A program made the position numbers and the translations under genes. Below, piece after piece: positions 58,752 through 62,354 of a stretch of DNA of 64,000 bases; the first letter of the stretch is position 1; each line of letters starts with the position of its first letter. The notes beneath the pieces were generated by a model that was not told where the DNA came from, did no database searches, and saw nothing but the letters and a program-made list of their open reading frames with translations. Source of the DNA: the human T2T-CHM13v2.0 reference genome, Homo sapiens; the NCBI RefSeq assembly GCF_009914755.1, contig NC_060925.1. One strand, 5' to 3'.

Positions 58752-59605
58752 CTTACTCCTGAAGAGGGGCTTGGCTCCAGGCCCACAGTACTCGTTGTAG
58801 ATGAGCTTGAAGAGGAAGAGGTGGAAGAGGGTGATTAGGGAGGCCACGCTGAACCAGAAGAGGAAGGGCAGCCCGGGGTCCTGCTGGGCCATGTGCTCAT
58901 CATGGGCCAGGATGGCCTTGAGGTGCAGCGTGTGCCGCAGGTCCTGCAGGTGTGTGAGGTCGGTGGAGATGTAGAGCAGTGGCGTGATGGGCTGTGTCAC
59001 CATGACCGAGAAGGTGTGGCCCGTGGGCGCCGAGGTCAGCTCCACTGGCTCGTCCAGGCAGCCTGCCTTGCAGGCATAGATCTTGACAGGCTGGCCACGG
59101 GACTCCACGGACACGTGTAGGTAGGGCTTGCCCTCGGCATCCGCCAGCACGGCCAGGTTGATATGGTCGTTCTTGTAGCGGATGCCATGCAATGCATAGC
59201 TGTTGTGCAGCACGTCGGGGTCGGCCTGGAACTGGAGGTGGTTCTCTGTGAACTGCAGCCCCCCAAAGCTGAGCACCATCCCCTGCAGGATGCCTGGGGC
59301 ACCCACCTTCACCAGCCCCTTGCAGCCACGCTTCTGGAGGGTCAGCCTCCACAGGTCAGAGAGCTGCAGGATCTGCTGGACGGAGGACAGCCGCCCCGGC
59401 CACAGGTTCTCGGCGTGCATGGTGGCGTGCCCGCTGAAGCAGTGATCTTCATAGTTGAGCGTCGACTCCATCTGGTCTCGCTCCCTGTGGCTCAGGGAGG
59501 GGCTGAGCAGTGGGGCTGGCGAGCAGGAGAGCATGTAATAGAGCGTCAGGTTCACGGTGAGGCCAGACGGCGTGTGGGTGTCAGTGATCTTCTTCATTTC
59601 CACTC
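58752..59605 (-). CDS. KIAA2013: KIAA2013 coding exon 2
   Basis: Acceptor TTGCAG|GA at 59605 is phase-compatible with exon 1 (G+GA=Gly, ...SPGVEMKKITD...); encodes C-terminal TM segment LPFLFWFSVASLITLFHLFLFKLIY; donor AAG|GTAGGA after 58752. 1033+854 nt = 629 codons. Confidence 0.95.
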
Positions 59606-61321
59606 CTGCAACACCATGAAAGCGGCATGTTAAGGGGGAAGGACAGCTGGGAGGCAGAGCATACGAAATAAAGACCAAGGGCAGCAGAAGAGTGAGGTGT
59701 TGTGCCTTAATGATAAAGACAGTGGTGCCCATCTCCCTAAAGTATAGAAGAAAGTCAGCCTGTCTTGTTTACACGACCAACTTGAGCCTGTGGGCCTGAA
59801 ATCTAGAATCCTGTTAAAAAGCAGCGGGGCCTGGTGCCAGAGCCCAGAGGAACACAGACTTAGCCAGGACTTGGCACCAACCCTATGGTCAGACATCCTG
59901 CGCCAGATCAGTCACCAGTGCTGAGGCCAGTCTCAGGCCACTTCTCCTCTCTGTCCTTTCTCTCTCCAGTCTTGTAGCTTTATGTATGTATGTATTTATT
60001 TGTTTATTGAGACAGAGTCTCACTGTGTTGCCCAGGCTTGAGTGCAGTGGAACGATCTCAGGTTACTACAGCCTCCGCCTCCCGGGTTCAAGTGATTCTC
60101 CCGTCTCAGCCTTTGAGTAGCTGGGACTACAGGTGCAGGCCACCACCCATGCCTAAAACAGCCCTGGCAGAAGCATTCAATAGACACTTGCTGAATAAAC
60201 ACGTGCTGGGCCCCTTTGCTACTGATGGATTCAACAGCCCTAAGATTTAAAAACATACACACACACAACTTTGTTTCTGTGAAGATGACCATCCTCTCGC
60301 CGGGCGCGGTGGCTCACGCCTGTAATCCCAGCACTTTGGGAGGCCAAGGTGGACGGATCATGAGGTCAGGTTAAGTTTTGTATTTTTAGTAGAGACAAGG
60401 TTTCGCCACGTTGGCCAGGTTGGCTTGAACTCCTGACCTCAGGTGATCCACCTGCCTCAGCCTCCCAAAGTGCTGGGATTACAGGCGTGAGCCACCGCGC
60501 CCAGCCAGCACATTCTAGCCTAAAAAGATGCCTTATTTTAATTTTAATTTTCACTTTTCTAATGTCTGTCTTCCTCCCAACCAGAATTTAAGCAAGCACC
60601 ATGAGAACAGGAACTCTGGTTCCCATCTGCACCCCCCCATGCATAGAACAGCCCTGGCAGAAGCATTCAATAGATACTTGCTGAATGAACTCAACTCTCT
60701 GAGCAACCAAACACAAAGGTTCAGACAATTGGAACCCTGGAAACCAAAACCCCTCTCTCATCCAGAACAGGATTTTCTTTTCTTTAACAGTCAACGAGAG
60801 GAGAGTTTTCATCGGGCGGGAGCATCTCAACCTGCTAAAAGGGATTCTCCAACCTCCCTGTGAACCAGTTGCAGCCACAACTGCCAGGACGCACCTCAGC
60901 CTAGCAGGGGTTATGTCAAGAAGCCCACGTCTGTCACCAGGCCGACTGCGGTGCTGAGCAAAGAATCAGGGGATCCACCTGCTGGTTTCACCTCTGCAAA
61001 CTGACTCTAAAACACTTCACTCTGCTCACATCAGGCCCCATCTACCAAAACAAGTAACAGAAAGAATTGACCTTTACACTCAATTGTCCACTACAGTCTC
61101 ATAAAAACCTTCTGAGGTAGGCGTTATTGTTATTAAATACAGGCCCAGAGAGATTAGGCGACGAATCCAAAGGTCGCACAGACACTAAGCAGTTGAGCAG
61201 ATTCAACCACTGGTGAAACGCCAAGCCCAAGTTTCAACCACCCCACCATCACCTTCAGTGTCACCTCTGCAGACTTGGGAGGGACATATCTAGGGTGGAC
61301 CAAGCGCTGGCCAGGACTCAC

Positions 61322-62354
61322 CTGGGCTGAAGAGCTGAGCCCAGAGGAGCTGGTGGTCTTGAAGCAGCTCCGCCGCTGGCATGTCCAAGAGCTCCAGCAT
61401 TTCCTTCCGTGCCAAGTCCTGCAGCGCCTTGAGCTCCTTGGCTGCTTTGCTTTTGAGCACCTGGGGGTTAATGGGGCCAGAGACGTGCACCACCCACAGC
61501 ACCGTCTCATCCAGCTGCGTCTTGGGAGCCACTTGGAGGCGGTTCACCAGCTTCTTGGCGGCCACCACCACCAGGTGCACCAACCCAGTGGGCGTAGGCG
61601 GGGACCGGCCTGAGTAGAGGAGGAACTGATGGTCTCCGACCTTCTCCAGGGTACTGGTGAAGGCCTTGGGGGCTGGGCCGGCAGTGGGCCCCACAGTCTG
61701 CAGCGCGGCCACGCGCTCCGTGGGGTTGTTGAGCTGGATGCGCTGCAGGTAGACGTGGGGTCGGCCCCTGTGCGCCAGAAAGTCCTCTTGCAGCAGCACG
61801 CAGTCGCGGCCGGACCCCGCGGCAAGGCCAGAGACGGAGGCGGGCCCGGGGCCGGCGGCCACGGGGCCAGGACCTGGGGACCCCAGCTGCAGGCAACGCA
61901 CGCGGCGCAGAAGCCCCTCCCGCAGCAGCAGCACCGCCTCTCCAGCTTCAGCCAGCGCGCTCAGCGGGCGCAGCTGCACGAAGGGCACAAAGTCCGGCGC
62001 CACGGCGGGCTCCCGCTCCCCGGGAGTCACCCACAGCCGATTGGCAGCCACGTCCAGGGCCAGGAAGCCGTTGGCCACCAGGGCCGGCACTCCAGGACCC
62101 AGCGGTACCACCTCACCGCGCTCCCGCAGGCCGCGCCAGGCGCGGGTGGCCGCCTCCAGGCAGGCAGACGGCTCGGCGGCGCCCGGCTCACCGCGGGACC
62201 AGGGCAGCAGGTGCAGGCCGCCCGCCGCCCGCCGCGCGCCGGACCCCCCAAACCACAGAAGCAGCAGCAGGAGGCCAAGCAGGCAGAGGAGGCGGCGGGC
62301 CCAGCTGCTCGACAGCAGTCCCGGCAGCCCCTTGAGCCGCTGCTGCAGCCACAT
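61322..62354 (-). CDS. KIAA2013: KIAA2013 coding exon 1 (codons 1-344 plus 1 nt)
   Basis: ATG at 62354 starts MWLQQRLKGLPGLLSSSWARRLLCLLGLLLLLLWF (hydrophobic N-terminal segment); open frame to donor CAG|GTGAGT after 61322; lies in a CpG island. Confidence 0.95.

What the first reader, a model, noticed from the sequence alone, without database searches (positions are those of the whole stretch)
58752..62354. KIAA2013 looks like a barrel-deleted GH65/PGGHG-like pseudo-glycosidase, next to the collagen lysyl hydroxylase gene PLOD1
Seen: in order, the protein has ALVANGFL (NGFL at 62061-62072), AHRGRPHV (61752-61775), HQLLWAQLF (61329-61355), LYYMLS (59526-59543), CFSGH (59427-59441) and GAPGILQGMVLSFGGLQFT..F..DP...GIRY (from about 59303), between an N-terminal hydrophobic segment and a C-terminal TM helix. 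Knowledge (recalled, not searched): glycoside hydrolase family 65, including human PGGHG that removes glucose from Glc-Gal-hydroxylysine, has the same collinear motifs: N-terminal NGYLG-like, AHRxxPHV, HxxxWxxLW linker, LYYLLS, YxGHxFWD, and GxGGxLQ...G before the C-terminal beta domain. Here only 41 residues separate the GH and G..LQ motifs, versus roughly 300 in GH65 enzymes. FWD is lost, so most of the (alpha/alpha)6 barrel and the catalytic Glu would be missing. Inference: a luminal, membrane-tethered non-catalytic GH65 relative (lectin, adaptor or partner subunit). Its divergent neighbour PLOD1 (outside the window) makes hydroxylysine, hinting at a collagen-glycosylation link.
Basis: partly seen in the sequence, partly recalled or inferred. 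Interest (0 to 1): 0.85.

Follow-up and report, generated by a model that had tools for sequence, protein, structure and literature searches.

The report
Barrel-less GH65 glucosidase relic in Golgi
KIAA2013, a conserved Golgi membrane protein of unknown function, looks like a dead relative of the collagen-sugar-trimming enzyme PGGHG that has lost most of its catalytic barrel, which gives a first structural handle on an uncharacterised human gene.

Summary
All 8 motifs sit at the stated coordinates. Human PGGHG, spliced in a script from chr11, carries matching collinear motifs.

An AlphaFold2 model of a 91%-identical rodent orthologue (pLDDT 83) hits the six human PGGHG crystal-structure chains first in the PDB (Foldseek E 2e-14 to 8e-13, prob 1.00). 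Other GH65 enzymes follow, then GH95, GH94 and GH63.

Profile-profile alignment gives two collinear matches, with P from 3e-6 to 1e-3 depending on the alignment. None of 26 reversed or shuffled controls comes near. Plain profile-to-sequence searches (Pfam, PDB sequences) fail.

Between the GH and G..LQ motifs there are 41 residues, against 289 in PGGHG. The acid Glu430 lies in the missing part, and the base Glu574 aligns to Leu432. So it is GH65-derived but fails GH65 membership as an enzyme.

Two papers place it in the Golgi. The membrane helix and the first 21 residues are nearly invariant, which points to a non-catalytic partner or scaffold role.

The PLOD1 neighbourhood is real (8.3 kb), but a collagen function is untested. 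No searched paper links KIAA2013 to GH65.

The parts
62292..62354 (-). Codons 1-21, the nearly invariant N-terminal tail that precedes the first hydrophobic segment
   Evidence: On average 0.98 of 89 vertebrate rows are identical to human. The tail is identical in 13 of 13 rows of A1.
62244..62291 (-). Codons 22-37, the first hydrophobic segment (either a signal peptide or a signal anchor)
   Evidence: Kyte-Doolittle 19-residue windows above 1.6 start at aa 17-23. The sequence itself is variable (0.40 identity), as expected for a purely hydrophobic requirement.
61485..62099 (-). Codons 86-290, the N-terminal beta-sandwich homologous to the GH65 N domain. It holds the NGFL and AHRGRPHV motifs.
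   Evidence: The model shows strands over P0004 residues 26-235, which are human 82-291. hhalign aligns human 86-408 with PGGHG 19-301. Bacterial GH65 Foldseek hits align about 340 columns. 1 of 13 orthologues gives a weak Pfam Glyco_hydro_65N hit at E 0.044.
61326..61484 (-). Codons 291-343, the helical linker ending in HQLLWAQLF
   Evidence: Helices at P0004 241-267 and 271-286. This stretch aligns to PGGHG HAQAWAQLW in the best hhalign and tblastn matches.
59427..59605 (-). Codons 345-404, the remnant of the start of the barrel (LYYMLS helix to CFSGH). It carries the only N-glycosylation sequon, at N363.
   Evidence: Aligns to PGGHG 240-297, LYYLLS to CYWGH. The sequon is kept in 89 of 89 rows and Cys400 in 89 of 89.
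59361..59426 (-). Codons 405-426, a short stand-in for about 267 residues of the GH65 barrel (PGGHG 302-568). This is the deletion point.
   Evidence: The two hhalign matches end at human 408 / PGGHG 301 and restart at human 427 / PGGHG 569. The motif gap is 41 against 289 residues. PGGHG Glu430 lies in the missing part.
59259..59360 (-). Codons 427-460, the remnant of the end of the barrel. W430-R431-L432 aligns with W572-T573-E574 of PGGHG, followed by the GAPGILQGMVLSF helix.
   Evidence: hhalign aligns human 427-497 with PGGHG 569-638, P 9.6e-4. Helix at P0004 391-402.
58965..59258 (-). Codons 461-558, the C-terminal beta-sandwich (GLQFT..DP..GIRY)
   Evidence: Strands at P0004 405-502. 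Its start is covered by the second hhalign match. A model of the exon-2 piece alone gives PGGHG as the top Foldseek hit, but only at E 0.011.
58875..58964 (-). Codons 559-588, the juxtamembrane helix
   Evidence: Helix at P0004 505-530. 0.84 identity over 89 rows.
58797..58874 (-). Codons 589-614, the nearly invariant membrane helix
   Evidence: Kyte-Doolittle windows above 1.6 start at aa 589-596, and 0.99 of 89 rows are identical to human. Helix at P0004 533-561.
58752..58796 (-). Codons 615-629, the short C-terminal tail (with Cys618). It continues in exon 3.
   Evidence: 0.82 identity. Cys618 is kept in 88 of 89 rows.
56431..56448 (-). Codons 630-634 plus the stop codon (exon 3)
   Evidence: the frame closes here to give 634 aa.

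Best explanation
KIAA2013 (Pfam DUF2152) descends from a GH65 alpha-glucosidase of the PGGHG type and can no longer be an enzyme of that kind.

It keeps the N-terminal beta-sandwich, the helical linker, the first and last pieces of the (alpha/alpha)6 barrel and the C-terminal beta-sandwich. About 250-270 residues of the barrel have been replaced by roughly 22. The lost part includes the general-acid Glu and the W and D of the GHxFWD motif (a sugar-binding role for it is recalled, not checked). The general-base Glu is replaced by Leu. All of this is shown here.

The GH65-like body carries one conserved N-glycan sequon and seven conserved cysteines. It is held on a Golgi membrane by a nearly invariant C-terminal helix. 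It may also be held by the N-terminal hydrophobic segment, whose 21-residue leader is likewise invariant (conservation shown here; Golgi location from papers).

My inference is that it works without catalysis. I think it is a membrane-anchored partner or scaffold subunit whose membrane helix, short tails and membrane-proximal half bind other Golgi or endolysosomal membrane proteins. This would resemble other dead glycosidase ectodomains that serve as ancillary subunits. The truncation is old: an amphioxus fragment has the same short spacing, and arthropod family clusters are 563-609 aa long.
For: Structure:
- An AF2 model of P0004 (equivalent to human 57-634, 91% identical) has pLDDT 83.1 and pTM 0.81.
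- In Foldseek against the PDB, ranks 1-6 are human PGGHG crystal-structure chains of entries 9sd4-9sd8 (E 2.3e-14 to 7.6e-13, prob 1.00, TMq 0.48-0.49, about 750 columns). Other GH65 follow (1h54 at 8.1e-10, 3wiq, 7fe3, 6w0p, 4ktp, 9lb6), then GH95, GH94 and GH63. 63 matches have E <= 0.001. The PGGHG entries were released in 2026.

Sequence:
- Collinear motifs are present in both proteins.
- hhalign of the family against a GH65 alignment gave P 3.2e-6 (prob 88%) in one version. The corrected version gave P 1.2e-4 (human 86-408 against PGGHG 19-301) plus P 9.6e-4 (427-497 against 569-638).
- 0 of 26 controls scored above 22.5.
- With the protein's own family left out, the protein-language-model neighbours that carry a Pfam family are all GH65, but scores are 0.81-0.83, so this is a lead only.

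Loss of catalysis: the motif gap is 41 against 289 residues. E430 and E574 were placed in the spliced 737-aa PGGHG and match the PDB mutant names. The roles of the acid and base Glu come from passages of PMC8626586.

Location: 21-fold Golgi-IP enrichment with co-localisation with GCC185 (PMC10193996, passages), and endogenous staining with GBF1 (bioRxiv 10.64898/2026.03.28.714993, passages).

Conservation: membrane helix 0.99 and N-tail 0.98, against 0.37 for the N domain, over 89 rows.

Age: the amphioxus fragment P0153 has the same short spacing, about 40 residues by my hand count of the printed sequence. DUF2152 clusters occur in Arthropoda (563 and 609 aa) and Nematoda.
Against: - Profile-to-sequence methods see nothing. 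Pfam gives only DUF2152 for both human pieces. 0 of 13 orthologues hit Glyco_hydro_65m or 65C, and 1 of 13 hits 65N at a non-significant E of 0.044. A family profile against PDB sequences finds only SOS2, at E about 1.
- hhalign probabilities are moderate (55-88%) and change with the alignment. Against PGGHG alone the best P is 0.0018.
- The C-terminal half on its own gives no Foldseek hit at E <= 0.001. PGGHG is top there at E 0.011.
- The Glu574-to-Leu432 pairing rests on the weaker hhalign match.
- I had no model coordinates, so I could not count the retained helices by superposition.
- The scaffold or partner mechanism is inference. No binding partner was tested. The only interaction hints are second-hand: AP-MS with CB2 and BioGRID names quoted in a preprint.

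Confidence: 0.8

Rival explanations
1. It is a luminal lectin or cargo receptor for Glc-Gal-hydroxylysine on collagens and collagen-like proteins, functionally tied to its neighbour PLOD1.
For: - PGGHG, whose substrate is Glc-Gal-Hyl, is the nearest structure (substrate from PMC8626586 passages).
- PLOD1 starts 8.3 kb from the KIAA2013 start, in divergent orientation.
- A fathead-minnow gene model joins the start of a PLOD GT domain to the KIAA2013 exon-2 part. This suggests the two genes also lie close together in a teleost.
Against: - The part of the fold that binds the sugar in GH65 is the part that is missing or changed: the barrel, the W and D of GHxFWD, and both Glu residues.
- KIAA2013 is reported in the Golgi, whereas hydroxylysine formation and glycosylation take place in the ER (recalled).
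- 8.3 kb is too far for a shared bidirectional promoter of the usual kind.
- A single chimeric model may be an annotation or assembly error.
- No searched paper links the two. For KIAA2013 plus PGGHG there were 2 papers: one I opened and found to be a gene list, and the other I saw only as a listing.
Confidence: 0.08
2. It is an accessory or assembly subunit of a specific Golgi or endolysosomal membrane machine, such as the a2-containing V-ATPase or gamma-secretase. In this view the dead GH65 body acts as a luminal cap and the invariant helix is buried in the complex.
For: - The membrane helix is 0.99 identical over 89 vertebrate rows, far more than a simple anchor needs.
- A preprint quotes BioGRID interactions with ATP6V0A2, NCSTN and ATP1B3, presence in a lysosomal proteome, and a fitness effect of knockout in leukaemia cells (10.1101/2023.02.28.530540, passages).
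- The protein is depleted by ionophores that disturb Golgi pH (PMC13769034, one table passage).
Against: The interaction data are second-hand and come from high-throughput screens. I saw no primary data. A search for KIAA2013 plus V-ATPase returned only the Golgi-IP paper. Nothing in the sequence points to a particular complex.
Confidence: 0.12
3. The resemblance is only at the level of a common fold (a generic beta-supersandwich plus helices) and is not due to descent from GH65.
For: - GH95, GH94 and GH63 structures also match at E 1e-7 to 1e-4.
- HMMER-level searches are negative.
- TM-scores are below 0.5.
Against: - GH65 fills the first 18 ranks shown, and PGGHG leads by four orders of magnitude.
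- Six short motifs recur in the same order.
- The hhalign matches are collinear and beat 26 of 26 controls.
- The low TM-score is expected when a 250-residue domain is missing.
Confidence: 0.05

Closest known systems
Human PGGHG (ATHL1), a GH65 protein-glucosylgalactosylhydroxylysine glucosidase; PDB 9sd4-9sd8
   Same: It is the best structural match. Both proteins share the N-terminal beta-sandwich, the helical linker, the first and last barrel segments and the start of the C-terminal beta domain. The motifs are collinear: NAYLG/NGFLA, AHRTLPHV/AHRGRPHV, HAQAWAQLW/HQLLWAQLF, LYYLLS/LYYMLS, CYWGH/CFSGH and GMGGFLQ/GAPGILQ.
   Different: PGGHG has the full barrel, with 289 residues between the GH and G..LQ motifs against 41. 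It has Glu430 and Glu574 and the complete GHVFWD motif. Its translation shows no N-terminal hydrophobic stretch by eye and ends without one; no hydropathy scan was run on it. KIAA2013 has two hydrophobic segments and is a Golgi membrane protein. Identity in the Foldseek alignments is only 12-14%.
Bacterial GH65 phosphorylases and hydrolases (maltose phosphorylase 1h54, kojibiose phosphorylase 3wiq, alpha-1,2-glucosidase 7fe3)
   Same: The four-region GH65 architecture is the template (PMC8626586 passages). The N domain plus linker match at Foldseek E 8e-10 to 1e-8. My GH65 alignment consensus (PGGHG plus eight bacterial rows) reads NGY.G, close to the NGFLA of KIAA2013.
   Different: These are soluble enzymes with a complete barrel, a catalytic acid, and either a phosphate site or a base Glu. 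Only about 340 columns align.
Dead glycosidase ectodomains used as ancillary subunits or lectins: 4F2hc/SLC3A2 (GH13-like), chitinase-like proteins (GH18-like) and EDEMs (GH47-like). All recalled, not searched.
   Same: A glycosidase fold that has lost catalysis and is reused for protein-protein or glycan binding. 4F2hc is also a single-pass membrane protein that partners multi-pass membrane proteins.
   Different: Those proteins keep the whole catalytic-domain fold and mostly keep the pocket. KIAA2013 has lost most of the catalytic domain itself and keeps the two flanking beta domains.
Pfam DUF2152 (PF10222)
   Same: Human exon 1 and exon 2 pieces match at E 1.6e-127 and 1.8e-170, covering profile positions 1-308 and 310-593 of 593.
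   Different: The family description as printed by the tool is 'Uncharacterized conserved protein'. It names no fold or relationship.

Membership tests
GH65 (CAZy glycoside hydrolase family 65) | N-terminal beta-sandwich domain (Pfam Glyco_hydro_65N) | tested here: met
   Foldseek matches to GH65 structures. hhalign aligns human 86-408 with PGGHG 19-301. The Pfam HMM itself is not reached: 1 of 13 orthologues at E 0.044.
GH65 (CAZy glycoside hydrolase family 65) | Helical linker between the N domain and the barrel | tested here: met
   Two long helices in the model. HQLLWAQLF aligns to HAQAWAQLW in every hhalign run and in the top tblastn match.
GH65 (CAZy glycoside hydrolase family 65) | [quoted passage not shown] | tested here: not met
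   41 against 289 residues between the flanking motifs. The model has five helices of four or more residues between the linker and the C-terminal sandwich. 0 of 13 orthologues hit PF03632.
GH65 (CAZy glycoside hydrolase family 65) | General-acid glutamate (Glu430 of PGGHG, Glu472 of FjGH65A) | tested here: not met
   Glu430 lies within PGGHG 302-568, which has no counterpart in KIAA2013. Its role is described in PMC8626586 passages.
GH65 (CAZy glycoside hydrolase family 65) | General-base glutamate (hydrolases) or Ser-Ser phosphate site (phosphorylases) | tested here: not met
   W572-T573-E574 of PGGHG aligns to W430-R431-L432. This comes from the weaker match (P 9.6e-4), so the exact pairing is tentative.
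GH65 (CAZy glycoside hydrolase family 65) | C-terminal beta-sheet domain (Pfam Glyco_hydro_65C) | tested here: inconclusive
   A beta-sandwich is predicted. hhalign covers its start. The full-length Foldseek alignment to PGGHG spans about 750 columns. The C half alone reaches only E 0.011 with prob 0.99, and there is no Pfam hit.
GH65 (CAZy glycoside hydrolase family 65) | Hydrolysis or phosphorolysis of alpha-glucosides | not testable with these tools
   Needs an enzyme assay. No activity is predicted from the missing residues.
Pfam DUF2152 (PF10222) | Match to the family HMM above the gathering score (29.4 bits) | tested here: met
   426.8 and 568.6 bits for the two human pieces. 13 of 13 orthologues match.
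Glycosidase-derived lectins (chitinase-like, EDEM-like; recalled) | Retained sugar-binding pocket of the parent fold | tested here: not met
   The pocket-forming barrel is missing, and FWD is replaced by TMH.

The most novel reading that the evidence does not exclude
A membrane-tethered, barrel-less GH65 relic still recognises hydroxylysine-linked Glc-Gal (or the collagenous peptide around it). It would do so through its surviving N and C beta domains and would act in the Golgi as a sorting or quality-control receptor for collagens and collagen-like secreted proteins. Its chromosomal link to PLOD1 would then date back at least to bony fish. This would be a new type of lectin built from the flanking domains of a glycosidase rather than from its pocket.
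Probability: 0.07. Interest if true: 0.9.

Novelty: new variant of a known kind. Interest (0 to 1): 0.62.

Why it matters
KIAA2013 is conserved from arthropods and nematodes to humans. It is a confirmed Golgi resident and a fitness gene in some blood-cancer cells. A September 2026 preprint still calls it 'very poorly characterized'.

Placing it as a second human GH65-derived protein, the nearest structural relative of PGGHG, gives a concrete fold and clear domain boundaries. It also gives a firm prediction of no glucosidase activity, and a set of testable surfaces: the invariant membrane helix, the N-tail and the conserved membrane-proximal half.

It also shows an unusual route of pseudoenzyme evolution. 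The catalytic domain is largely excised, while both flanking beta domains and the first and last barrel segments are kept.

In the library I searched, no paper connects KIAA2013 with GH65 or PGGHG. One mollusc survey lists a DUF2152 domain among the auxiliary domains of glycoside hydrolase genes, without saying in the text which family.

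Tried and rejected
Steps that gave nothing:
- Pfam hmmscan of the human pieces and of 13 orthologues found only DUF2152, plus one sub-threshold 65N hit.
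- A family profile against PDB sequences found only SOS2, at E about 1.
- tblastn of KIAA2013 against the PGGHG locus gave a best match at E 0.30. It is the right region but is not significant by itself.
- Searching the human genome with Pfam Glyco_hydro_65m found only two weak PGGHG exons and nothing in the window.
- A scan of viral contigs with a PGGHG exon found no relative.

Invertebrate orthologues. My third and last protein search used the C-terminal 338 residues so that the length filter would leave out full-length vertebrate proteins. It returned 33 proteins: 32 from vertebrates and one amphioxus fragment. The arthropod and nematode members are therefore known to me only as Atlas cluster rows. 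One search listed the best 120 of 227 hits, all vertebrate. I did not see the other 107.

GH65 sampling. Only 6 of 201 sampled genomes of one bacterial phylum carried GH65. My GH65 profile therefore rests on PGGHG plus 8 bacterial sequences. In one search I had picked the longest open frame per locus. For L009 and L012 that was the wrong strand, and I corrected this. The better P value (3.2e-6) comes from the uncorrected alignment.

Heterodimer with PGGHG. I considered this and rejected it. PGGHG shows no N-terminal hydrophobic stretch by eye, so the two should sit on opposite sides of the membrane (inference).

Supplements are closed. The Golgi-IP datasets, the tables of the persister preprint, and Figure 1b and the supplements of the mollusc paper (which would say which GH family carries DUF2152) could bear on the claims. 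I did not see them.

The PGGHG crystal-structure paper was not found in the library.

Full report
**What is in the window.** The three annotated coding parts on the minus strand (61322-62354, 58752-59605, 56431-56448) were translated separately and joined in a script. They give a 634-aa protein. Hydropathy shows two hydrophobic stretches, around aa 17-41 and 589-614. Both human pieces match only Pfam DUF2152: exon 1 at E 1.6e-127 over profile positions 1-308, and exon 2 at E 1.8e-170 over 310-593.

**The family.** Word-indexed protein searches returned vertebrate orthologues named 'KIAA2013 homolog'. One search found 227 hits, of which I saw the best 120. The human 634-aa protein itself was not among the stored proteins. 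As a proxy I used P0004 from Octodon degus, a 578-aa partial protein that aligns without gaps to human 57-634 at 91% identity.

Conservation is very uneven. Over 89 rows the fraction identical to human is as follows:

| Region | Fraction identical |
|---|---|
| First 21 residues | 0.98 |
| Hydrophobic segment | 0.40 |
| N-terminal beta domain | 0.37 |
| Barrel remnant | 0.71-0.74 |
| C-terminal sandwich | 0.79 |
| Juxtamembrane helix | 0.84 |
| Membrane helix | 0.99 |

One N-glycan sequon (N363) is kept in 89 of 89 rows. Cysteines 65, 154, 185, 400, 439, 523, 527 and 618 are kept in 86-89 of 89 rows.

**Structure test.** An AlphaFold2 model of P0004 with an 88-row alignment has mean pLDDT 83.1 and pTM 0.81. 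In order it shows:
- a beta-sandwich (residues 26-235);
- two long linker helices (241-286);
- a few helices (303-402);
- a second beta-sandwich (405-502);
- a juxtamembrane helix and a membrane helix.

In Foldseek against the PDB, the six human PGGHG crystal-structure chains (entries 9sd4-9sd8, released February 2026) take ranks 1-6. Their values are E 2.3e-14 to 7.6e-13, probability 1.00, TM-score 0.48-0.49 on the query, and about 750 alignment columns. Next come other GH65 enzymes: maltose phosphorylase 1h54 at 8.1e-10, kojibiose phosphorylases, the alpha-1,2-glucosidase 7fe3, and others. After these come GH95, GH139, GH94 and GH63. 63 matches have E <= 0.001.

A separate model of the human exon-2 piece alone (aa 346-629, pLDDT 72.3) again has PGGHG on top. 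There it reaches only E 0.011 (probability 0.99, 157 columns), and no match reaches E <= 0.001. Most of the statistical weight therefore comes from the N domain and linker. The C-terminal half is consistent with the homology but is not decisive alone.

**Sequence test.** I fetched the PGGHG locus from the reference genome and read its open pieces. I chose GT-AG splice sites and obtained a 737-aa protein. Glu430 and Glu574 in it sit in the contexts expected from the PDB mutant names E430Q and E574Q.

The locus holds AHRTLPH, HAQAWAQLW, LYYLLS, GHVFWD and GMGGFLQ in that order. The N-terminal motif reads NAYLG in PGGHG and NGY.G in my GH65 alignment consensus (PGGHG plus eight bacterial rows).

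The hhalign results were:

| Comparison | Result |
|---|---|
| Family alignment against PGGHG alone | Three collinear matches, P 0.0018, 0.066 and 0.23 |
| Against PGGHG plus bacterial GH65 from genome loci, first version (two wrongly chosen frames) | P 3.2e-6, probability 88% |
| Same, corrected version | Human 86-408 with PGGHG 19-301 (P 1.2e-4, probability 55%); human 427-497 with PGGHG 569-638 (P 9.6e-4) |
| Control, reversed alignment | Score 18.7 |
| Control, 25 column shuffles | Score at most 22.5 |
| Real score in the same control setting (only the second match reported) | 38.8 |

By contrast, profile-to-sequence searches are blind to the relationship. Protein-language-model neighbours outside the family that carry a Pfam name are all GH65, but their scores are only 0.81-0.83, which the tool rates as a lead only.

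**What is missing.** The two hhalign matches leave human 409-426 facing PGGHG 302-568. The motif-to-motif distance is 41 residues in KIAA2013 and 289 in PGGHG.

Passages of PMC8626586 define GH65 by four regions: N-terminal beta-sandwich, helical linker, (alpha/alpha)6 barrel and C-terminal beta-sheet domain. They also describe a general-acid Glu in all members and a general-base Glu in the hydrolases. In KIAA2013:
- the acid falls in the missing stretch;
- the base aligns to Leu432, on the weaker match;
- GHVFWD has become GHATMH.

The protein is therefore GH65-derived, but it fails the family's catalytic criteria.

The truncation is old. An amphioxus fragment has the same short spacing, about 40 residues by my hand count of the printed sequence. 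Atlas clusters of the family in Arthropoda are 563 and 609 aa long. A nematode cluster of 858 aa adds a DnaJ domain.

**Where it is and what is known.** I read the following passages.

| Source | What it reports |
|---|---|
| PMC10193996 | 21-fold enrichment in Golgi immunoprecipitates; co-localisation of tagged KIAA2013 with GCC185, also after nocodazole |
| bioRxiv 10.64898/2026.03.28.714993 | Endogenous staining with the Golgi marker GBF1, some puncta; calls the protein very poorly characterised |
| PMC13769034 (table entry) | Listed among Golgi proteins depleted by Golgi-disrupting stressors |
| PMC6763791 | Found only in CB2 pull-downs |
| bioRxiv 10.1101/2023.02.28.530540 | A fitness effect of knockout in leukaemia cells; quotes DepMap, a lysosomal proteome and BioGRID partners (ATP6V0A2, ATP1B3, NCSTN) |

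Searches for KIAA2013 with 'glycoside hydrolase' found 0 papers. With PGGHG they found 2. One is a methylation gene list that I opened, and the other I saw only as a listing. A search for DUF2152 found one paper, a mollusc GH survey. It names a DUF2152 domain among auxiliary domains of GH genes in a figure legend, without saying which family.

**How it most likely works.**

Shown here:
- the GH65-derived fold;
- the loss of the barrel and of the catalytic residues;
- a conserved sequon and conserved cysteines, which fit a luminal body;
- a near-invariant membrane helix and N-terminal tail.

Taken from papers: Golgi residence.

Inferred: the protein acts without catalysis as a membrane-anchored partner or scaffold, and its most constrained parts (helix, tails, membrane-proximal half) are the working surfaces.

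A classical lectin role is disfavoured because the pocket-forming part is gone.

The invariant 21-residue leader before the first hydrophobic segment suggests a cytosolic tail plus a signal anchor. That would mean a two-anchor topology, rather than the cleaved signal peptide quoted from UniProt. This is my inference and needs a topology assay.

**The PLOD1 question.** PLOD1 starts 8,293 bases beyond the KIAA2013 start on the opposite strand, outside the window. A database protein from fathead minnow joins residues 29-99 of a PLOD GT domain to the KIAA2013 exon-2 part. This hints that the genes are also close together in a teleost, though it may be a model error. I could not examine other genomes. 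No data here tie KIAA2013 to collagen.

**Verdict.** The functional link to collagen remains open. I rate this a new variant of a known kind, a GH65 relic without its catalytic domain, and of moderate to high interest.

Noticed in passing
G000 chr16:14989052-14991369 (locus L013:3053-5370), outside the window: An intronless retrocopy of KIAA2013, annotated LOC728138 'KIAA2013 pseudogene', lies inside PDXDC1. It is 98.2% identical to the parent mRNA over 2321 nt and has a T-run (poly-A) at its 3' end. Its reading frame is still open: 633 codons, with 18 substitutions and one codon deletion relative to the parent (11 synonymous and 18 non-synonymous codon changes). The changes include the invariant Cys400 and Arg6. 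It is the only extra copy found in this genome. A preprint lists KIAA2013 among the parent genes whose retrocopies appear in both inserted and deleted structural variants.
   Followed up: partly
window 62292-62354 (-) and 58797-58874 (-): The first 21 codons and the membrane helix are 0.98 and 0.99 identical over 89 vertebrate rows, against 0.37 for the N-terminal luminal domain. A long invariant leader is odd for a cleaved signal peptide. It suggests a cytosolic N-tail with a signal anchor.
   Followed up: partly
protein P0152 (Pimephales promelas), not in the window: A database gene model named procollagen-lysine dioxygenase joins the start of a PLOD GT domain (aa 29-99) to the KIAA2013 exon-2 part (aa 98-366). 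This is either evidence that the two genes are neighbours in a teleost or an annotation error.
   Followed up: partly
Atlas cluster rows, not in the window: A nematode cluster of 858 aa combines a DnaJ (J) domain with DUF2152 in all of its members. This hints at a link to Hsp70-type chaperones. I could not fetch any of the sequences.
   Followed up: no
window 61815-61889 (-), about codons 156-180: A Gly/Pro/Ala-rich loop in the N domain is modelled at pLDDT below 50 (P0004 residues 107-125). It is largely absent from the fish and reptile rows. The database isoform P0002 (596 aa) differs from the 634-aa protein in this stretch.
   Followed up: no
L003:14-800 (upstream of PGGHG on chr11): A tandem repeat of about 122 bp stays open in all three forward frames and gives near-identical 85-aa pieces.
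   Followed up: no
PMC7560691 (figure legend): A mollusc glycoside-hydrolase survey names a 'DUF2152 domain' among the auxiliary domains of GH genes that were picked by Pfam GH hits. Some mollusc DUF2152 proteins may therefore still match a GH Pfam model, but the text does not say which family.
   Followed up: partly
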